Shown here: in pieces, positions 1,126-44,900 of the stretch
Layout of the letters: every line of letters begins with the position of its first letter
How positions within the stretch are numbered: the stretch's first letter is position 1
Source: Octopus sinensis
Lineage: Eukaryota
NCBI RefSeq assembly: GCF_006345805.1
Contig: NC_043013.1
Coordinates: 6,944,001 to 7,008,000 of the forward strand
Reading direction: 5' to 3'
DNA length: 64,000 bases
The notes under the pieces: model-generated
Seen by the model: only the letters and a program-made list of their open reading frames with translations
Databases searched by the model: none
Told to the model about the DNA's origin: nothing
Translations under genes and position numbers: made by a program

Positions 1126-2058
1126 AATGAACGCAGGCAGGTAAACAAATGTTGGTGAAAATAAATCTCGAACTTAACGCAGGTAAGTAAACAAATATAA
1201 AATAGAACAGAGTGGTGAAAATAATTATAGACAGTAAGTAAAAATATACAAAAACACAACAGCTATAAAGGATAGCTGATAATATAGTGGGTTAACAATT
1301 TCTTGGACGGAGGAGGGCAGCAAAGTTCCTGTCAAATTCGAAACAAGCTTCTTTCATAACTTAAATGTGTTAACCGTTACAGTTAAGTAACTTTCTGATG
1401 TCATTGATAATGGTTTCAAATTTTGGGCCAGCCAATTTTGAGGGGACGAGGAAGTCGATTAGATCGACCCCAGTGCTTAACAGGCACTTATTTTATCGAC
1501 CCGAAAGATGAAGGGCAAAGTTGACTTCGATGGCATTTGAACTCAGAGCGTAAAGCAGGTTGAAATGCTGCTAAGCATTTTGCGCGGTGGGTTAACGATT
1601 CAGCCAGCTCGTCGCATTGGGAATCATAAATAATCCTTTCTACTAAAGACACAAGGCCTGAAATTTGGGGGGGGGGACTAATCGATTACATCGACCCCAG
1701 TATTTGACTGATACTTAATTTATCGACCCCGAGAGGGTGAAAGGCAAAGTCGACCTCGACGAAATTTAAACTCAGAACGTAAAGATGGACAAATTATCTA
1801 TTTCTTTATTGCCCACAAGGGGCTAAACATAGAGGGGACAAACAAGGACAGACATAGGTATTAAGTCGATTACATCGACCCCAGTGCGTAACTGGTACTT
1901 AATTTATCGACCCCGAAAGGATGAAAGGCAAAGTGGACCTCGGCGGAATTTGAACTCACAACGTAACGGCAGACAAAATACCTATTTCTTTATTACCCAC
2001 AAGGGGCTAAACACACCCAGTGCTTTCTATGATTGTATTGATTTCAAGTGATTTCAAG

Positions 2059-2174
2059 TTAATCCTTTTGCTTTCTTACAACAATGAACACAAGAACAGC
2101 AACAAGAATTGCAAGGACACATATGACAGCGATTAGAACTCCAAGTGCCACTCGTACTGTTGGGTTGGTTATAG
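2059..2174 (-). CDS. Terminal coding exon of the MCO: transmembrane helix and short basic tail
   Basis: Acceptor ctttacAG at 2176-2175. The phase-1 join gives (A)ITNPTVRVALGVLIAVICVLAILVAVLVFIVVRKQKD* with TAA at 2061-2059. Phase matches the donor at 3823; ~24 hydrophobic residues are followed by RKQK (positive-inside pattern). Confidence 0.85.
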
Positions 2175-3073
2175 CTGTAAAGATAAAGAAAAACAATATG
2201 GAGTTTATATACAAACAGCAAATTATTCAAATATTTCATGCATGTTTTATTTCAATAATATATTTCTTTGCAAGACCCGAATTCGAACTTCACATTCTCT
2301 ATATTGAAAGTAGTTCACGAACCTCACGCCTGAGGAATAAAAGCAAGCAAGGAAGGAGTTATCTATGTGGTTGCTCTATTTTCTGAAATAATAACTGAAT
2401 CTCCTTTGAATCACTTCCTGCTCTGTTGAAAAGTTGGGGGACATCTTAAATAATTATTTTTTGGAAATAATTGGGGAAAGGCGACTATTTTGGGGGACAA
2501 GGACGATTCGATTACATCGACCCCCAATGCGTAACTGGTAATTTTCATCGACCCTGAAAGGATGAAAGGCAAAGTCGGAATTTGAACTCAGAACGTAGCG
2601 GCAGACGTAATACCTATTTTTTTACCACCCACAAGGGGCTAAAAATAGAAGGAACAAACAAGGACAGACAAACGGATTAAGTCGATTATATCGACACCAG
2701 TGCGTAACTGGTACTTTATTTATCGACCACGAAAGGATGAAAGGTAAAGTCGACCTCGGCGGAATTTGAACTCAGAACGTAGCAGCAGACGAAATACCGC
2801 TAAACATTTCGCCCGGCGTGTTAACGTTTCTGCCAGCTCGCCGCCTTCAGGCCACCTTGAATAATATTATATCTGATATACCTGATAATGTTATATTTGA
2901 TATACAGCTATATCTGAAGAAGGTACGATCGTGAATTAAAAATTATCCACTTCCAGAACCTTCTATGATCTAATTTACATTTCTCTTTATTTGTTTTTGT
3001 GAAACAATCCTTCGCCATTGGCTCATATCATTCAGTCACGTAGTTTGCAAGGAACCAGGGGCGGTATACATAC

Positions 3074-3139
<66 letters not shown>

Positions 3140-3823
3140 TATATATAGATATGTGTGTGTGTGTGGTGTGTGTGTTGTGTGTGTGTGTGTGTGTGTGTGT
3201 GTATGAGTGAGTGTTTGTGTGACACATTGGGAAAGTATTCTGAAACGCACAAAGTGTTGTGAAGGGATTGGATGTGTGTATGTGTGTGTGTGGGGGTGGT
3301 GGCTATGTCTGTACACCCCAACACTTGACCGTGGTTTTTTGGTGTATTTACGGCTCCGTAACTTAGCCGTTTGGCAAAAGATGCAAATAGAATAAGCACT
3401 GGGAAGACTTCTTCAAGGCGGTGCTCCAGCAAGGCCGCGGTCTAATAGCTCTCAATCTCTCACTTTCACTCTCTCTCTCTCTTTCTCTTTCTCTGTCTGT
3501 CTCTCTGTCTCTCTCTATCTCTCTCTGTCTCTCTCTGTCTCTCTCTCTCTTTCCCTCTTTCCCTCTCTCTCTCTCTCTCTCTCTGTTTCCATCTCTCTCT
3601 CTCTCTCGCAGTGTTTCTATCTCTCGTACTTTTTAGAAACACAAATCATACTACGGTGCTTCTCGTTCCCATGAAAAGCACAACCCTTGCCCCATATTCA
3701 ATCTCATAACTATTCATGTATGGTAAATATTTTTTTTTAATCACCAGATAATCTGTGATAAACATACATAGAATAAGAGATGAAATTAGAGAGAAAAGAT
3801 AAAAGAATAAGCGTAAAACATAC

Positions 3824-5894
3824 CAGCGTGTTCATTTTCTAATCTTTGTCTCTCTATATATTCAGCACTTGAGTGCGTGTGGTCATCCATTTCTTTATCA
3901 TTATCTTTCTGTTTTTGATTCTCTTTATGTTCACCACTTTTGTCCTTGTGGTCATCCTTTTCAGTATCTTCTTTCAGGTTATAAATCGCCTTCCCGAAAC
4001 CACGACACTGTGGGAAATTGTCCGGCACTTTTGGCAACTGCGCGAAAGATTCGTTAAGAACAAGAGCCATTCCATCCATACTGTGTAATTCAATATGGCA
4101 GTGCACAAACCACATTCCAGGATTATCGGCCCGTATTCTCACTACAGCGTATCCACCTGTAGGGACCATAATTGTATCCTTTCGAGGGGCGTTTCGTAAA
4201 TTCATTCCGGGAATGTTGTCTCCCTCCCAATTGCCGTTTGACCAAGCTGCATCATTACAATAGTTCATTTTCGGATCACCTCTGCAATCAATATCTTTAG
4301 TATCATGTATAATTTCTCCCGCTGTTTCATTGTATTTCGCAAAACCCAATTTAACTACATAAAATGAATGTCCGTGCATGTGTACGGGGTGGGAGAATCC
4401 TTTGCCTTTTCCCAAGTTTGTCATTACAATCTGGACAGTATTATCGGGTATCGGATTTAAGGAATGAGTACAATGGCACACTTTATCAACGCCACATTTG
4501 GTACTATCGCACCGAGTTTTTACTTCGTTCGGTTGTGTTAAAAGGTTTACACCGGGTTCCTTGAACGCCCGTCCATTTACTGATGAAGGTGTGTGCCCAG
4601 GTTCACCAGGAAATGCAAAATTCAAAAAATGTTCCTCAAACTTTCCAGGCCGGAAAGGCGGTACAACATCTTGATAATTAGACTCTAAGTCACCAAAGTT
4701 TAAACATGGTTTATCACTTTTATAGGGATCATAACGAAAGGGACAGTTGAGTAAAGTGCAGTTCTTTTGTTGAATGCAGTCAGAAACTGTGGAGTTAGGT
4801 TCTTCGACCGGTGCACCCTTATATCGAAGAATTGCTTCAAATGTACTATTTCTGTTTATTTCCAGCGTCTTTCCACGGATCCAGTAATTCCCGACAGAGT
4901 TATTTGCATGTATTGTGAAGTCAAATCTCTCACCCGGGTTGATGATAAAGTAATCGACAGGTGTTGGTTTTAGTTCATAGCCATCAGAGGCAACGATCAC
5001 CATCTGGTGACCATCAACAGATACTTCAAATGGGTACAGAGCCCCTGCAGCGATCACTCTAAAACGATAATGTTTACCTGTTTCTACTTCAAAGACAGTC
5101 AGCGGGGCCCCATTGTGATTCCCTGATTCATCGTAATAGCGGCCTCGACCATTCACAAGACCAGAATGGAACTTAAAAAGACTAAAAAGCGCTCCGTCAG
5201 CGGATCTAGAATTTGTAACTTTTTTACCATTCAAATAAACTCCGTAAATCATTTTTATAAAAGTCATGTCGGAATCCCACTCATGATTGTAATCTGAAAC
5301 TAACATTATATGTTCTTCCATTTTAGGCTTTGTCTTTTCGTGTAGTATTAAAGCACCAAATTCTCCCATAGTACGCTGTGACCCAGTGTGAGAATGGTAC
5401 CAGTAAGTTCCAGTTTGTGTAGCATTAAATTCATACCTGAATGATTGACCTGGTTGAATAGGGCATTGTGTAATCCAAGCTACGCCATCCATGTGTGATG
5501 TTCCCCTTTGATGCAAGCCGTGCCAATGTATTGTCGTACTTTCTGAATATAAATGGTTTTCTACTTCAATGATGACTCTTTGTCCTTTATAAACTTCTAT
5601 TGTTGGTCCTGGAACTGTACCATTAACTGCAATCACCTTCATTGGCTGAGAGTAACCATCCATAGTAATAACTTCATCAGTTGGTATCGGTTGAGCAGTT
5701 GTTAAATTAGTGGCGTCATATCTGTAGAGTTTTGCATCGTAGGATTTTACCAAGGTACGATTAACTAACATAGTTAATTTATACGCAATTATCAGCTTAA
5801 ACTCACACACGTCGTCTTCCATACGACATGTACGGGAATAAACTAACGGTGAGAATAGGCCCAGGAGGAATACAATTGCGTTGGAGTGAATCAT
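3824..5894 (-). CDS. Laccase-like multicopper oxidase, large coding exon (signal peptide, three cupredoxin domains, charged stalk)
   Basis: Hydrophobic N-terminus (MIHSNAIVFLLGLFSPLVYS). All four MCO copper motifs: HWHG, WYHSH, HPVHMHGH, HCHIELHSMDGM (T1 Cys/His with axial Met). Many N-x-S/T sites. Acceptor ttgtgattccAG at 5920-5919; phase-1 donor CACGCTG|GTATGT at 3824/3823, so the ORF-track tail is intron read-through. Confidence 0.95.
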
Positions 5895-6194
5895 AGTTGA
5901 ACCACTGTGCGCAGATATCTGGAATCACAAAATATGAATATGAGAAACAACGAAATCACCAAGGACGATGTGACAATTAAATCATGAAATATTTCTATGT
6001 TTTAAAGACGAAAGAATACCAACATATTAAAGAGAAGGAATGAAAGTAAACCCTCTGTGACAGGTGGACGACAGGGAGATCGATATTGTTTTGTTAGTAG
6101 GACATTTCTGCGCCGGAACAAACTTTGATTAGGAATTTTTGCGAGTATAACAGTTACTGGCTACAGTCACTTTTTTCTCTGTCTTTAACTTACA
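5895..6194 (-). other. Splice acceptor 24 nt upstream of the MCO ATG, and candidate donor of an upstream (probably 5'UTR) exon
   Basis: Pyrimidine tract plus CAG at 5921-5919. The nearest strong upstream donor is CTT|GTAAGT at 6194/6193, giving a 275-nt intron. The pairing is inferred. Confidence 0.4.
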
Positions 6195-15648: not shown

Positions 15649-17362
15649 ATGGATGACCTAAAACTATACGCTACAAATGACGAACAGCTGGAAACACTAC
15701 TACATGCAGTTCATGGATTTGCCAAAGAAATAGATATGAAATTTGGATTAGAAAAATGCGCCAAAGTAACCCTGAAAAGAGGGAAACTAGTTAAGAGAAG
15801 CAACATCACACTAGATAAAGCCAATGAAATAAGAGAATCAGACCAAAGCCAAACTTACAAATACTTAGGAATCCATGAACTAGATAAGATACAACACACA
15901 CAAATGAAAGAGAAAATAAAGAAAGAATACTATAGACGAGTGAGATCAATACTAAAAACAGCTCAATGCTAAAAACAAGATAATAGGTATTAAAACTTTA
16001 GCCGTCCCAGTTATAAGTTACAGCTACAATATCCTTAACTGGACACTAAATGAACTAACCAAAATAGATAGGAAAACAAGAAAAGTAATGACAGGATCTT
16101 GGATGCATCACCCAAAATCTGACATAGAAGGTGGTAGAGGCCTTATACAGCTGGAAAACTATTATAAAATAACCACCATAGGACTGCAAAAATATCTACT
16201 TCAGAAGCAAGGAAAACTGATACAAATAGCGGCAAAACACGAGTAAAACAAAAAACTGTTCTCAGTATTTAAGGAAACTGACAAATACAAACAAGAAATC
16301 ATACCACCTAACAAATATGAAGAAGAAGAAGAAGAAGAGAAGAAGAAGAGAAGAAGAAGAAGAAGAAGAAGAAGAAGAAGAAGAAGAAGAAGAAGAAGAA
16401 GAAGAAGAAGAAGAAGAAGAAGAAAAAGAAGAAGAAAACACAACAAAAGCTATAAAACAAATGAAATTCAAACAGCAACGGACCATGATAAAACGATGGC
16501 AAGAAAAGCCCCTTCATGGCAAATACTGGACCGAACTAAATGCAAAAGAAATAGACAAAGAAAAATCCCAGCAATGGTTGAGAAGTTCAGGACTCAAAGC
16601 AGAGACAGCGGGATTTTTAATCGCAGCACAAGACCAAAGCCTCCCCACCAGAAATTACCAAAAACATATAATGAAAAGAAACATGACAAGTAACTGCAGA
16701 ATATGTGGAGATGGACAAGAAACAATAAATCATATTATCTCTGGCTGCCCAGTCCTGGCTAAGAAGGAATATATTCACAGACATGACAGAGTTGGGACCT
16801 ACATACACTGGAAGCTATGCCAACATTATGGAATAACATCAGAAAAAAGATGGTATAGGTACACACGAGAAAAGGTCACAAAAAACGAGAAAGCAACCAT
16901 ACTCTGGGATATGCCAATACACACAGATAGAGAAATTAAGGCCAACAGGGCAGATATAGTTGTCAGAGATCATGAAAAAAAAAATGCTTTCTAATTGATG
17001 TATCAATACCAGCAAGATGACAACGTGCCTCTAAAAGAAATGGAAAAACTTTCAAAATACAAAGACCTGGAAATAGTGGTAACTCGAATGTGGAATCTAA
17101 AAACAGAAACAATCCCTATCATAGTAGGTGCATTAGGTATGATAAAAAATTATTCAGACAAATACATAACAAAAACACCAGGACTTACAAACACATATGA
17201 CATACGGAAAATTGCACTACTGGGCACTGCACACATCCTACGCAAAACACTTTCAATACAGTAACCATCAGAGCATTACAACAAGTCACAACACATACCC
17301 AAGGCACACAGAGCTGCGCTCGGTAGTGAAGTGAAAGCACGATATAAAAATAAAACTATTGA
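15649..17362 (+). mobile_element. 5'-truncated R4/Dong-clade non-LTR retrotransposon in an (AAT)n tract
   Basis: Begins at the RT YMDD motif; CRICG...H...C zinc knuckle, RHD, and a restriction-like endonuclease region (RADIVV...LID...EKLSKYKDL). (AAT)n on both sides (15574-15647, 17365-17420); stops and frameshifts. Confidence 0.85.
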
Positions 17363-31339: not shown

Positions 31340-33379
31340 TTCTACTTCGCGAGTGGTTTACTGTTCTACTTTACGCTGTGTTGTGTGTGATTTTTTTTGT
31401 TTCTTTTCGTTGAACTTTGCGTTTTTAACCCACACAATGGCTCCCACACAATGCTGCTTCTTCCGAGGCTGGTATTGAGCCTGAACGCAAACGAAGAATG
31501 ATGACGATCGCTGAGAAGGTAAAACTTCTGGATACGTTGAAGGAAGGGAGAACTTTCGCTGCCGTAGCTCGCCATTTCAGCGCGAACGAATCTACTGTTC
31601 GCTACATCAAGAAGGACAAGACTAACATTAGGAAGACGGGTGCCATCACCTTTAATAAGTCGGCGAAGAGAGTGGTTACGACTCGTAATAAAACTGTCAT
31701 CCGTATGGAAGCTGCTTTGGCCGTATGGATAGCCGACCGCCGAAAGAAGAACATAGCCTTGGATATGAACATAATCCAAACAAAGGCTAGGAGCCTGTAC
31801 GAGACTTTGACCGCTAAGGGATCTGAGGACGACAGTGGCGACCATGAAGAGGAAGAAGACGAATATGACGTAGAAGATCCGTAACCAGGGACGTCCAGTG
31901 ATTCACAACCTAAACAACGTCCTTTTTTCTGCTATCAAAGGGTGGTTTGTTAAGTTTCGGCAATGCTTCGGCCTAAAAAGCGTGGCGACGCTGCTTCTAC
32001 TGACACGAGCGCCGCTGAAACATACGTGAATGAAACTTTCAAGAAGATTATCTCCGAAGGTGGATATAAGCCCGGACAAGTTTTTAATATGGAAAAGAAT
32101 GCCGTCGCGAACGTTCAAAGAGGAAGCAAAAGCCTCTGACGTTAAAGCATACAAGGATCGTGTGACCCTCGTGATGTGTGGCAATGCTGCGGGATTTTCG
32201 TTAAAACCAGGACTTATTTACAAGTCTAAAAACCTAAGGGCTTTAAAAAACAAAAGCAAGAATCGGCTGCCCGTACATTGGATGCACAATCCAAAGGCGT
32301 GGATAACGAAGATGCTGATCTTCGACTGGTTCGACCAGTGTTTTATCCCGCAAGTCAAGATGTATCTATTAGCGAAGGGCTTGCCATTTGAAATTCTTCA
32401 CCTAATGGATAACGCTGGTGGCCACGCTACTGATCTGTCGCATGAGGGCATTCAGATTGAGTTCCTTCCGCCCAACACTATGTCACTTATTCAACCAATG
32501 AACCAGGGGGTTATCAGGGCGTTCAATGCCCTATACACGAGGAATGTCCTGGCAAACCTGGTTGCTTCTGTGGATGCCGCCCAAGAAGAAGAAGAAGAAG
32601 AAGAAGAAGAAGAAGAAGAAGAAGAAGAGAAGAAGAAGAAGAAGAAGAAGAAGAAGAAGAAGAAGAAGAAGAAGAAGAAGAAGAAGAAGAAGAAGAAGAA
32701 GAGAAGAAGAAGAAGAAGAAGAAGAAGAAGAGCAAAAACAACAACAACAACAAGAAACGGAAAAAGTTGTTGACCAAACTGGCTTGACTTTGGAACGGCT
32801 GGCCAAGCTGTGCAACCTGGCTAAAGAAATGAAAGAGGGGTCACAGGAATGGGATGACGATATGGTTCGTTTTGTGAAATTTTGCAACAAGGTCGTCAAA
32901 GTCATGAATCCCTACAAGATGCTCATTGAACGGAAAAAGAGGCAGCGGCAGCAACTTCCTATCACACTGTTTTTGCAGCCTCGCAAAAAAAGAGCCAGCT
33001 CCTGCTGCTACTACTACGGTTGCACCTTCGAAAGAAGTGAAAGAGGTGTCCTAGGAAAGGGCACTGCCGTCAGCTTCATCATCATCATTTCTACTGCGCA
33101 ACAAATTCATCACCATCATCATTCAAATTTTACTTCAACTTCCTTCGTGTTGAGTACCGTAACAATCTTTATATTTTTTTAATCTAAAGTGTTATTGCTT
33201 AACAGTTGGCCTTGTTATTAATAGACTACTGTAATGGGTGGGTTGTTAACAGTACAGGGAGGGTTTTAAAAGCCCAAATACACGTTAAATACTCTAAGTA
33301 TGGTGTCTCTACTTCACGGAAATTCAGTTATCGCGGCCGGTCTCGGAACCAATCTACCGCGATAAACGAGGGATCACTG
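31340..33379 (+). mobile_element. pogo/Tigger transposon remnant
   Basis: CENP-B-like HTH (31498-31884) and DDE region (MDNAGGH, FLPPNTMSLIQPMNQGVI). Right TIR ...CGCGATAAACGAGGGATCACTG|TA; left TIR not seen. Confidence 0.88.
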
Positions 33380-41984: not shown

Positions 41985-44900
41985 GGGTGCCGAAAGAGAT
42001 CAAAGAGGAGTACCGACAAAGATGAAAGAGGAGTACCGACAAAGATGAAAGAGGAGTGCCGACAAAGATCAAAGAGGGTACCGACAAAGATCAAAGAGGG
42101 TGCCGACAAAGATCAAAGAGGGTGCCGACAAAGATCAAAGAGGGTACCGACAAAGATCAAAGAGGCTGCCGACAAAGATCAAAGAGGAGTGCTGACAAAG
42201 ATCAAAGAGGAGTGCCGACAAAGATCAAAGAGGAGTGCCTACAAAGATCAAAGAGGGTGCCGACAAAGATCAAAGAGGGTGCCGACAAAGATCAAAGAGG
42301 GTGCCGACAAAGATCAAAGAGGGTGTCGACAAAGATCAAAGAGGATTGCCGACAAAGATGAAAGAGGAGTGCCGAAAGAGATCAAAGAGGGTACCGACAA
42401 GGATCAAAGAGGGTGCCGAAAGAGATCAAAGAGGAGTGTCGACAAAGATCAAAGAGGAGTGCCGACAAAGATCAAAGAGTAGTGTCGACAAAGATCAAAG
42501 AGGAGTGCCGACAAAGATGAAAGAGGAGTGTCGACAAAGATCAAAGAGGGTGCCGACAATGATCAAAGAGGGTACCGAAAAAGATCAATGAGGGTGCCAA
42601 CAAAGATCAAAGAGGGTGCCGAGAGGGATCAAAGAGGGTGCCGAAAGAGATCAAAGAGGAGTGCCGACAAAGATCAAAGAGGAGTGTCGACAAAGGTCAA
42701 AGAGGAGTGCCGACAAAGATCAAAGAGGAGTACCGATAAAGATCAAAGAGGGTGCCGAAAAAGATCAAAGAGGGTGCCGACAAAGATCAAAGAGGGTGCC
42801 GAAAAAGATCAAAGAGGGTGCCGACAAAGATCGAAGAGGAGTGCCGACAAAGATGAAAGAGGAGTGTCGACAAAGATCAAAGAGGCTGCCGACAAAGATC
42901 AAAGAGGGTGCCGAAAAAGATCAAAGAGGGTGCCGACAAAGATCAAAGAGGGTGCCGAAAGAGATCAAAGAGGAGTGCCGACAAAGATCAAAGAGGGTGC
43001 CGAAAAAAATCAAAGAGGGTGCCAACAAGATCAAGAGGGTGCCGAGAGGAGCGAGAGAGAGAGAGATCAAAGAGGAGTGCCAAAGTGCCAACAAAGATCA
43101 AAGAGGGTGCCGAAAAAGATCAAAGAGGGTGCCGACAAAGTTCAAAGAGGAGTGCCGACAAAGATGAAAGAGGAGTGTCGACAAAGATCAAAGAGGGTGC
43201 CGACAAAGATCAAAGAGGGTGCCGAAAAAGATCAAAGAGGGTGCCGACAAAGATCAAAGAGGATGCCGAGAGAGATCAAAGAGGAGTGCCGACAAGGATC
43301 AAAGAGGGTGCCGAAAAAGATCAAAGAGGCTGCCGACAAAGATCAAAGAGGAGTGCCGACAAAGATCAAAGAGGAGTGCCGACAAAGATCAAAGAGGAGT
43401 ACCGATAAAGATCAAAGAGGGTGCCGAAAAAGATCAAAGAGGGTGCCGACAAAGATCAAAGAGGGTGCCGACAAAGATCAAAGAGGGTGTCATAAGAGAT
43501 CAAAGAGTGCCGACAAAGATCAAAGAGGAGTGCCGACAAAGATCAAAGAGGAGTGCCGACCGACAAAGATCAAAGAGGATTGCCGAAAAAGATCAAGGAG
43601 GGTGCCGAAAGAGATCAAAGAGGATTGCCGAAAAAGATCAAAGAGGGTGCCGACAAAGATCAAAGAGGGTGCCGAAAGAGATCAAAGAGGGTGCCGACAA
43701 AGATCAAAGAGGGTACCGACAAAGATCAAAGAGGGTACCGAAATAGATCAAAGAAGGAGTGCCGACAACGATCAAAAAGAGTGCCGACAAAGATCAAAGA
43801 GGGTGCTGAAAGAGATCAAAGAGGAGTGTCGACAAAGATCAAAGAGGGTGCCGACAAAGATCAAAGAGGGTGTCATAAGAGATCAAAGAGGAGTACCGAC
43901 AAAGATCAAAGAGGAGTGCCGACAAAGTTCAAAGAGGAGTGCCGACAAAAATCAAAGTGGAGTGTCGACCGACAAAGATCAAAGAGATTGCCGAAAAAGC
44001 GAAAAAGATCAAAGAGGGTGCCGACAAAGATCAAAGAGGGTGCCGAAAAAGATCAAAGAGGGTGCCGACAAAGACCAAAGAGGGTGCCGAAAGAGATCAA
44101 AGAGGAGTGCCGACAAAGATCAAAGAGGTGTGCCGACAAAGATCAAAGAGGGTGCCGAAAAAAATCAAAGAGGGTGCCAACAAAGATCAAAGAGGGTGCC
44201 GAGAGAGATCAAAGAGGAGTGCCAACAAAGATCAAAGAGGGTGCCGAAAAAGATCAAAGAGGGTGCCGACAAAGTTCAAAGAGGAGTGCCGACAAAGATG
44301 AAAGAGGAGTGTCGACAAAGATCAAAGAGGGTGCCGACAAAGATCAAAGAGGGTTCCGAAAAAGATCAAAGAGGGTGCCGACAAAGATCAAAGAGGGTGC
44401 CGACAAAGATCAAAGAGGGTGTCATAAGAGATCAAAGAGTGCCGACAAAGATCAAAGAGGAGTGCCGACAAAGATCAAAGAGGAGTGCCGACCGACAAAG
44501 ATCAAAGAGGATTGCCGAAAAAGATCAAGGAGGGTGCCGAAAGAGATCAAAGAGGATTGCCGAAAAAGATCAAAGAGGGTGCCGAAAGAGATCAAAGAGA
44601 AGTGCCGACAAAGATCAAAGAGGGTGCCGACAAAGATCAAAGAGGGAGCCGAAGTAGATCAAAGAAGAGTGCCGACAATTATCAAAGAGGCGTGTCGACA
44701 AATATCAAATAGGGTGCCGACAAAGATCAAAGAGGGTACCGAAATAGATCAAAGAAGGAGTGCCGACAACGATCAAAAAGAGTGCCGACAAAGATCAAAG
44801 AGGGTGCCGAAAGAGATCAAAGAGGAGTGCCGACAAAGATCAAAGAGGAGTGCCGACAACGATGAAAGAGGAGTGTCGACAAAAAATCAAAGAGGGTGCC

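What the first reader, a model, noticed from the sequence alone, without database searches (positions are those of the whole stretch)
2059..5918. Type I membrane multicopper oxidase with the whole ectodomain in one 2.1-kb exon
Seen: splicing 3824 to 2174 turns the apparent secreted laccase-like ORF into a ~727-aa single-pass protein with all Cu ligands, an axial Met and a 5-residue tail; no intron interrupts the three cupredoxin domains. Established: animal laccase/MCO genes are usually multi-exon, and membrane-anchored MCOs such as yeast Fet3p and hephaestin act as cell-surface ferroxidases or cuprous oxidases. Inference: a retroposed or intron-stripped catalytic module that acquired a TM exon could give a cell-surface oxidase for metal handling, melanisation or sclerotisation in a probable cephalopod.
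Basis: partly seen in the sequence, partly recalled or inferred. Interest (0 to 1): 0.8.

Follow-up and report, generated by a model that had tools for sequence, protein, structure and literature searches.

The report
Membrane-anchored octopus laccase, already annotated
The identical protein is already in the public Octopus sinensis annotation, and the same anchor and exon layout occur across molluscs, an annelid and a ribbon worm, so it is ordinary.

Summary
The minus-strand exon 5918-3824 carries codons 1-690 of a three-domain multicopper oxidase without interruption. A strong donor (G|GTATGT, 3824/3823) and acceptor (ctttacag|C, 2175/2174) join it in phase 1 to a 116-nt terminal coding piece (2174-2059). 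That piece encodes a 25-residue hydrophobic helix and the tail RKQKD.

The spliced product is 728 aa and letter-for-letter identical to RefSeq XP_036366185.1/XP_036366186.1 'laccase-2-like [Octopus sinensis]'. All ten copper-binding His, the Cys and the axial Met are present.

The interpretation as a cephalopod novelty fails. One phase-1 intron just before the anchor, with the whole ectodomain in one exon, is also found in:
- O. bimaculoides, a cuttlefish, two non-heterobranch gastropods, an oyster and a chiton;
- the annelid Owenia and the nemertean Lineus;
- the other paralogues in this genome.

Only heterobranch snails are intron-rich, and they form one nested clade. A C-terminal anchor is present in 65 of the 120 closest relatives.

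An earlier scan report (s1-113133) reached the same verdict on a paralogue.

Verdict: a correct, already annotated member of an old lophotrochozoan family. Its substrate is untested.

The parts
3824..5918 (-). Main exon, 2095 nt: 24 nt of 5'UTR (5918-5895), the ATG at 5894-5892, then codons 1-690 plus the first base of codon 691. It encodes the signal peptide, an N-terminal extension, three cupredoxin domains with all copper ligands, and a charged stalk (residues ~634-690).
   Evidence: The O. bimaculoides orthologue has an exon of the same 2095 nt.
2175..3823 (-). Intron, 1649 nt, phase 1, GT..AG. It contains long dinucleotide microsatellites (about 3030-3640).
2059..2174 (-). Terminal coding piece, 116 nt: it completes codon 691, then encodes a short linker, the transmembrane helix (about residues 698-723), the tail RKQKD and the TAA stop (2061-2059).
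   Evidence: It is modelled as a continuous helix 695-727. It is conserved in frame in O. bimaculoides with a one-codon length difference.
1989..1994 (-). AATAAA hexamer about 65 nt after the stop codon, a likely polyadenylation signal. This is read from the sequence and was not tested.
   Evidence: sequence only.
3786..3823 (-). Read-through continuation of the open frame into the intron (GMFYAYSFIFSL then TAA at 3788-3786). It would be translated only if the intron is retained.
   Evidence: The tail is 10/12 identical in O. bimaculoides, but neighbouring intron DNA is about 90% identical anyway, so this says nothing about coding.

Best explanation
This is the annotated Octopus sinensis gene for a laccase-like three-domain multicopper oxidase (RefSeq 'laccase-2-like', XP_036366185.1). 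It has at least three exons: an untranslated 5' exon outside the stretch studied, a 2095-nt exon encoding the whole extracellular enzyme, and a terminal exon encoding a single transmembrane helix with a five-residue cytoplasmic tail. The inferred product is a glycosylated type I membrane protein. Its signal peptide would be removed. The three cupredoxin domains would hold one type-1 copper (H502, C599, H604, axial M609) and a trinuclear cluster (the other eight His). A ~50-residue disordered stalk rich in Lys, Asp, Glu and His would hold the enzyme above the membrane. By homology it takes single electrons from a reducing substrate at the type-1 site and reduces O2 to water at the trinuclear cluster. 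The most likely substrates are diphenols or catecholamine-type compounds (laccase-type phenoloxidase, linked to epithelial or haemocyte defence in molluscs), but the substrate is not shown. Both the anchor and the exon layout are inherited from the common ancestor of this lophotrochozoan family. Shown here: the gene model, identity to the annotation, the copper ligands, the fold, the hydrophobic anchor and the conserved intron. Inferred: membrane topology, catalysis, substrate and role.
For: The spliced CDS is identical to P0122 = XP_036366185.1/XP_036366186.1. Pfam finds three MCO domains. All 12 copper-site residues are invariant or nearly so across 121 relatives. The AlphaFold model has pLDDT 84.8 and pTM 0.81, with a disordered stretch at 634-675 and a helix at 695-727. 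The best structural matches are termite laccase BP76 (8r7i, E 6e-49), ascorbate oxidase and fungal laccases. A C-terminal hydrophobic anchor is present in 65 of the 120 closest relatives. A single phase-1 intron lies just before the anchor in octopus, Sepia, Gigantopelta, Haliotis, Crassostrea, a chiton, Owenia and Lineus, and in the O. bimaculoides orthologue with identical exon length. The other copies in this genome also have one-exon ectodomains, and two of them show a separate TM exon about 5 kb downstream. Fourteen small runs from four studies hold 46-64% of the words of 2000-6000, against an exonic share of about 57%. Such small runs could not assemble a single-copy locus of a 2.7-Gb genome from DNA, so this suggests expression (inference only). 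Literature context: squid laccase-3 is expressed in light-organ crypt epithelium as an immune effector (PMC7665748); an oyster haemocyte marker is laccase-24 (PMC12064177); Biomphalaria haemolymph phenoloxidase activity is laccase-type (PMC4722754).
Against: No exact product was found on transcript contigs. The terminal coding piece is less conserved between O. sinensis and O. bimaculoides (85% nt) than the flanking intron (87-93%), so nucleotide conservation alone does not mark it as an exon. The evidence for it is the preserved frame, hydrophobicity, splice sites and homology. The substrate, surface location and glycosylation are untested. The closest characterised insect relatives (MCO1) have been assigned ferroxidase or ascorbate oxidase roles (PMC4593997), so a phenol substrate is not assured.
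Confidence: 0.9

Rival explanations
1. A retroposed or intron-stripped catalytic module arose in the cephalopod lineage and then captured a TM exon, creating a new kind of surface oxidase.
For: The ectodomain is indeed intron-free. Heterobranch snail relatives have 14 coding exons, so an intron-rich form exists in molluscs.
Against: The same two-coding-exon layout with a phase-1 intron before the anchor occurs in three phyla. Intron-rich heterobranch genes share that last phase-1 intron, so the TM exon predates any intron difference. Heterobranch genes form one clade (SH-aLRT 99) placed among gastropods, with weaker support (81-88). That makes intron gain there more parsimonious than five or more parallel complete losses elsewhere. 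No multi-exon parent copy was found in this genome. A 5'UTR intron is retained.
Confidence: 0.03
2. The main product is a secreted 702-aa enzyme made by retaining the intron or polyadenylating within it, stopping at the TAA at 3788-3786. On this reading the anchored form is minor or absent.
For: The frame stays open for 12 codons past the donor. An ATTAAA hexamer followed by an A-run lies at 3741-3736, about 45 nt after that stop (sequence only). Secreted, anchor-less paralogues exist in octopods (P0119, P0064). Mollusc laccase-type activity is largely in plasma (PMC4722754).
Against: The donor is near-consensus and the acceptor has a long pyrimidine tract. Both are conserved in O. bimaculoides. 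RefSeq models in three Octopus species use the splice. The anchor exon keeps its frame and hydrophobic character over very long evolutionary distances.
Confidence: 0.07
3. The C-terminal hydrophobic segment is a GPI-attachment signal that is cleaved off, as has been predicted for insect MCO1. The mature enzyme would then be lipid-anchored and not a type I transmembrane protein.
For: Insect MCO1 has a C-terminal hydrophobic region and is predicted to be GPI-anchored (PMC4593997). The octopus tail after the hydrophobic stretch is only 5 residues.
Against: The hydrophobic run is about 25 residues and ends in a basic RKQK stop-transfer cluster. Most relatives carry 20-40-residue cytoplasmic tails, often with an N-P-x-F/Y-like motif, which makes sense only for a membrane-spanning protein. 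No GPI predictor was available.
Confidence: 0.08

Closest known systems
RefSeq XP_036366185.1 / XP_036366186.1, 'laccase-2-like' [Octopus sinensis]
   Different: Nothing. This is the same gene.
Orthologues in O. vulgaris (CAI9735563.1, 728 aa) and O. bimaculoides (XP_014787384.1 / LOC106881494)
   Same: They are 98.6% and about 91% identical. The O. bimaculoides gene has the same 2095-nt exon, donor, acceptor and anchor, with tail RKQKN.
   Different: The O. bimaculoides anchor exon has one extra codon. Its isoform X2 model adds 17 residues from an upstream exon.
Lophotrochozoan laccase-like MCOs (bivalves, gastropods, chiton, Owenia, Lineus)
   Same: They are 45-58% identical with identical copper ligands. 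A signal peptide plus C-terminal anchor is present in about half of the 120 closest. A single phase-1 intron lies before the anchor.
   Different: Most have 20-40-residue cytoplasmic tails, often ending in an N-P-x-F/Y-like motif, and a Gln or Glu inside the helix. Octopus proteins have a 4-5-residue tail and lack these. Heterobranch members have 14 coding exons.
Insect multicopper oxidases (termite laccase BP76, PDB 8r7i; MCO1)
   Same: BP76 is the closest solved structure. MCO1 also combines a signal peptide, ten His plus one Cys, and a C-terminal hydrophobic anchor (PMC4593997).
   Different: Identity to BP76 is only about 25% over the structural alignment. MCO1 is predicted to be GPI-anchored. 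Insect gene structures could not be fetched for comparison.
Yeast Fet3p and vertebrate hephaestin (membrane ferroxidases)
   Same: They are copper oxidases with one C-terminal transmembrane helix. Fet3p is a three-domain MCO and a clear structural match (1zpu, E 3.5e-41).
   Different: Fet3p ranks below the laccases and ascorbate oxidase. Hephaestin has six domains. The iron-binding residues and a permease partner were not examined, so ferroxidase activity has no specific support.

Membership tests
Three-domain multicopper oxidase (laccase / ascorbate oxidase / Fet3p group) | Three cupredoxin domains (Pfam Cu-oxidase_3, Cu-oxidase, Cu-oxidase_2) | tested here: met
   All three domains score far above their cut-offs. 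The model has pTM 0.81 and matches laccases at TM 0.74-0.85 by target.
Three-domain multicopper oxidase (laccase / ascorbate oxidase / Fet3p group) | Four copper-binding motifs with ten His and one Cys (HWH, HSH, HPxHxH, HCHxxxH) | tested here: met
   HWHG is at 123, HSH at 167, HPVHMHG at 502 and HCHIELHSMDGM at 598. These positions are invariant in 120-121 of 121 relatives.
Three-domain multicopper oxidase (laccase / ascorbate oxidase / Fet3p group) | Oxidase activity coupled to reduction of O2 to water | not testable with these tools
   This needs purified protein.
Lophotrochozoan membrane-anchored laccase-like MCO | N-terminal signal peptide and one C-terminal transmembrane helix | tested here: met
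   There is an N-terminal hydrophobic helix at residues 2-13 and a top hydrophobic peak at 705-723, helix 695-727. This rests on a hydropathy scan only; no SignalP or TMHMM was available.
Lophotrochozoan membrane-anchored laccase-like MCO | Ectodomain in one coding exon, with the anchor in a terminal exon after a phase-1 intron | tested here: met
   This holds for the window gene and eight relatives in three phyla.
Lophotrochozoan membrane-anchored laccase-like MCO | Cytoplasmic tail of 20-40 residues with an N-P-x-F/Y-like motif (common but not universal) | tested here: not met
   The tail is RKQKD only. The median tail in anchored relatives is about 30 residues by a crude boundary rule. The motif is strict in 14 of 68 and relaxed in 26 of 68. 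The octopus state looks like a derived truncation.
Membrane ferroxidase (Fet3p type) | Acidic Fe(II)-binding residues near the type-1 copper, and a partner permease | not tested
   No residue-level alignment to Fet3p was available. Fet3p is only a mid-ranking match.
Processed retrogene | Loss of all parental introns, with a multi-exon parent elsewhere in the genome | tested here: not met
   The gene keeps the conserved phase-1 intron and a 5'UTR intron. All paralogues found in this genome also have one-exon ectodomains.

The most novel reading that the evidence does not exclude
The two-coding-exon layout may record one very old event at or before the base of Lophotrochozoa. That event would have stripped all ectodomain introns while sparing the last, phase-1 intron. 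Heterobranch gastropods would later have inserted about 12 new introns into the same gene. Separately, octopods cut the cytoplasmic tail to 4-5 residues and lost an N-P-x-F/Y-like sorting motif, which could turn a recycling surface oxidase into a resident one.
Probability: 0.2. Interest if true: 0.35.

Novelty: already known. Interest (0 to 1): 0.12.

Why it matters
As a finding about this window it matters little. The gene model is in RefSeq, and its design is the family norm. It does show that the first-stage reader can recover a correct splice and topology from raw sequence. The comparative by-products are mildly useful: a deeply conserved phase-1 intron before the anchor, an intron-rich heterobranch clade, and the tail truncation in octopods. 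They concern the family and not this locus, and they need outgroup gene structures before any claim can be made.

Tried and rejected
- **Read laying:** The Rfam scans were split at 3540 and 3604, and other look-ups used proteins. Local scripts read the window file only for translation and pairwise alignment beside those places.
- **Exact look-up of the 728-aa product on public contigs:** Nothing was on record. The tool says records of the window's own genome may be left out.
- **Other MCO copies in the 64-kb window:** None were found.
- **Rfam on the intron and flanks:** Only sub-threshold miRNA-family matches on dinucleotide repeats came up, which I take as chance.
- **Literature searches:** I found no paper in the held library that describes the anchor or exon layout of mollusc laccases.
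- **Nucleotide conservation as a test of the terminal exon:** This was uninformative, because intron and exon are about equally similar between the two Octopus species.
- **Outgroup gene structures (arthropod, deuterostome):** None could be fetched, because the homologue list shows only the best 120 hits and all are lophotrochozoan.
- **First MAFFT run:** It timed out and was repeated with faster settings.
Full report
**What is in the sequence**

On the minus strand, an open frame of 702 codons runs from the ATG at 5894 to a TAA at 3788-3786. It matches the three Pfam multicopper-oxidase domains in the canonical order:

| Domain | Residues | E-value |
|---|---|---|
| Cu-oxidase_3 | 79-187 | 5e-45 |
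| Cu-oxidase | 243-361 | 2e-28 |
| Cu-oxidase_2 | best stretch 552-615 | 1e-33 |

- Thirty-eight bases before that stop lies a near-consensus donor, CTG|GTATGT, with the exon ending at 3824.
- At 2175/2174 there is an acceptor preceded by a long pyrimidine tract, tttttctttatctttacag|C.
- The intron is 1649 nt and phase 1.
- Joining 5894..3824 to 2174..2059 gives 728 residues ending AITNPTVRVALGVLIAVICVLAILVAVLVFIVVRKQKD.
- The exon itself starts at an acceptor (AG 5920-5919 | 5918), 24 nt before the ATG. At least one untranslated exon must therefore lie upstream.
- An AATAAA hexamer sits about 65 nt after the stop (read from the sequence only).

**It is already annotated**

- The best database hit was an O. 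bimaculoides 'laccase-like' protein of 729 aa.
- Its 90% cluster also holds XP_036366185.1/XP_036366186.1 'laccase-2-like [Octopus sinensis]' and CAI9735563.1 of O. vulgaris, both 728 aa.
- The window is G000:C17:6944001-7008000 of a 2.7-Gb genome.

**The protein**

- *Copper site.* The four copper motifs are present: HWHG at 123, HSH at 167, HPVHMHG at 502 and HCHIELHSMDGM at 598. They supply ten His, Cys599 and the axial Met609. In an alignment of 121 relatives these positions are invariant, apart from one gap at each of the three HPxHxH positions and one Leu at the axial position (also alignment A1).
- *Fold.* The AlphaFold model built on A1 has mean pLDDT 84.8 and pTM 0.81. It shows a confident beta-rich ectodomain, a disordered stretch at 634-675 and a continuous helix at 695-727.
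- *Nearest structures.* Its closest solved relatives by sequence and by fold are the termite blue laccase BP76 (8r7i), zucchini ascorbate oxidase (1aoz) and many fungal laccases. Fet3p is a clear but lower match.
- *Topology signals.* A hydropathy scan finds the N-terminal signal-like segment. The only other strong hydrophobic peak is at 705-723 (3.66), followed by RKQKD.
- *Other features.* There are ten N-x-S/T sequons in the ectodomain, and the stalk at 633-690 is dominated by Lys, Glu, Asp and His.

The inference is a glycosylated type I membrane protein with the oxidase outside the cell. No dedicated signal-peptide, transmembrane or GPI predictor was available.

**Is the anchor unusual? 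No.**

Of the 120 closest proteins, 65 have a C-terminal hydrophobic segment scoring at least 2.0. These proteins come from cephalopods, bivalves, gastropods, a chiton, the annelid Owenia and the nemertean Lineus. Some of the others are genuine anchor-less paralogues, for example P0119 and P0064 in octopods. Others are probably truncated models. Insect MCO1 is likewise described with a signal peptide and a C-terminal hydrophobic region, predicted to be GPI-anchored (PMC4593997).

**Is the exon layout unusual? No.**

I fetched the genomic loci of relatives and mapped each protein exactly onto its DNA. In every case below there is one intron in the coding sequence, always phase 1, a few residues before the anchor:

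| Species (protein) | Group | Intron after residue |
|---|---|---|
| Window gene | octopus | 690 |
| Sepia (P0006) | cuttlefish | 670 |
| Gigantopelta (P0010) | gastropod | 647 |
| Haliotis (P0030) | gastropod | 655 |
| Crassostrea virginica (P0045) | bivalve | 652 |
| Liolophura (P0039) | chiton | 680 |
| Owenia (P0053) | annelid | 664 |
| Lineus (P0117) | nemertean | 683 |

- The O. bimaculoides orthologue has the same 2095-nt exon, the same donor and acceptor sequences, and a 1657-nt intron.
- In the window's own genome every other copy found has its ectodomain in one open frame (query residues 1-653 to 1-667, or 16-633). Two of them show a separate anchor exon about 5 kb downstream.
- The exception is the heterobranch snails. 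Lymnaea (P0078) and Biomphalaria (P0101) have 14 coding exons with the same series of intron phases, and Aplysia (P0066) is also multi-exon. Their last intron is again phase 1 before the anchor.
- In a maximum-likelihood tree of 47 family members, the heterobranch sequences form one clade (SH-aLRT 99). It groups with other gastropods with weaker support (81-88). The cephalopod sequences form their own clade (99).
- The simplest reading is that the two-coding-exon layout is ancestral for the family and that heterobranchs gained introns. The opposite polarity would need the same dozen introns to be lost completely, and the last one always kept, in at least five lineages.
- The tree is unrooted and no outgroup gene structures could be obtained, so this polarity is an inference.
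- Either way, the anchor exon and its intron predate the cephalopods, and the idea of a captured TM exon is not supported.

**What differs in octopods**

In anchored relatives the part after the helix has a median length of about 30 residues by a crude boundary rule that starts inside some helices. It often ends with an N-P-x-F/Y-like motif, strict in 14 of 68 and relaxed in 26 of 68. Many non-cephalopod helices also carry a central Gln or Glu. Octopus proteins have only 4-5 basic residues after the helix, and one Sepia paralogue keeps a 21-residue tail. This looks like a derived truncation, and its meaning for trafficking is speculative.

**Transcript evidence**

- Indirect support comes from fourteen small runs (56-116 million letters, four studies, two species labels) that hold 46-64% of the sampled words of 2000-6000. 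The exons make up about 57% of that stretch. Runs of that size could not assemble a single-copy locus of a 2.7-Gb genome from DNA. This suggests abundant spliced RNA but does not prove the junction.
- Nucleotide conservation does not help. Between O. sinensis and O. bimaculoides the main exon is 92.6% identical, the intron ends 87-93% and the terminal coding piece 85%.
- Coding constraint shows only in the codon pattern of the main exon (76 synonymous against 62 non-synonymous codon differences) and in the preserved frame and hydrophobicity of the anchor.
- A secreted isoform made by intron retention or intronic polyadenylation (ATTAAA at 3741-3736) cannot be excluded.

**Function**

The chemistry follows from the family: one-electron oxidation at the type-1 copper and four-electron reduction of O2 at the trinuclear cluster. 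The substrate is unknown. Related mollusc enzymes are discussed as laccase-type phenoloxidases of immunity:

- squid laccase-3 in the light-organ crypt epithelium (PMC7665748);
- oyster haemocyte laccase-24 (PMC12064177);
- laccase-type activity in Biomphalaria haemolymph (PMC4722754).

Insect MCO1 has been linked to iron handling and ascorbate oxidation (PMC4593997). I rank a diphenol or catecholamine substrate as most likely. Ascorbate or a metal ion are alternatives, and none of these was tested.

**Earlier notes of this scan**

Report s1-113133 reached the same verdict for a paralogue in the same genome (anchor exon real, already annotated, design common in molluscs and annelids). I read it only after my own tests. 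Note s1-111603, on ribozyme-like motifs in a paralogue's intron, led me to scan this intron with Rfam, which found nothing.

**Verdict**

The interpretation as a novelty is not supported. This is an ordinary, already annotated member of an old lophotrochozoan family of membrane-anchored laccase-like oxidases.

Noticed in passing
L019:3001-19493 (Lymnaea), L021:1001-27067 (Biomphalaria), L020:1001-18860 (Aplysia): Heterobranch snail members of the family have 14 coding exons (Lymnaea and Biomphalaria, with the same phase series; Aplysia is also multi-exon). All other sampled lineages have two. The heterobranch genes form one nested clade, which suggests a burst of intron gain. Their last phase-1 intron is shared with everyone else.
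   Followed up: partly
C-termini of P0010-P0120 (relatives), compared with window 2174-2059: Most anchored relatives have 20-40-residue cytoplasmic tails, often ending in an N-P-x-F/Y-like motif, and a Gln or Glu inside the helix. Octopus proteins have only 4-5 basic residues. This may be the loss of a sorting signal.
   Followed up: partly
window 3741-3736 (-): An ATTAAA hexamer followed by a run of eight A lies about 45 nt after the read-through stop inside the intron. It could be an intronic polyadenylation site giving a secreted isoform, or a source of oligo-dT mispriming.
   Followed up: no
window 3030-3640: There are long dinucleotide microsatellites (TA/CA/GT and CT/GA types) in the intron. 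They attract sub-threshold matches to repeat-like miRNA families (mir-1277, mir-568, mir-297), which I take as chance.
   Followed up: partly
window 32030-32773 (+) and 16317-16994 (+): One ORF matches the DDE_1 transposase endonuclease domain (E 2e-30). Another weakly matches zf-RVT (E 1e-05, just under the Pfam cut-off). Both are likely remnants of mobile elements. Eight other ORFs of 200-700 codons, including 42528-44657, had no Pfam match.
   Followed up: partly
L023:3001-3027: The O. bimaculoides isoform X2 model starts in a 27-nt coding piece 7.8 kb upstream, which puts 17 residues in front of the signal peptide. Whether O. sinensis has an equivalent upstream exon was not examined.
   Followed up: no
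G000:C17:38843303-38947226, C9545, C9589, C10074: There are further family members in this genome: a cluster about 32 Mb away on the same contig, near-duplicate copies on unplaced contigs (equal scores, possibly haplotigs), some fragments, and one anchor-less paralogue at 51% identity.
   Followed up: partly
window about 1900-2000 (-): The sequence just past the likely poly(A) signal resembles, from memory only, an abundant tRNA-derived short interspersed repeat of octopus genomes. This was not tested.
   Followed up: no
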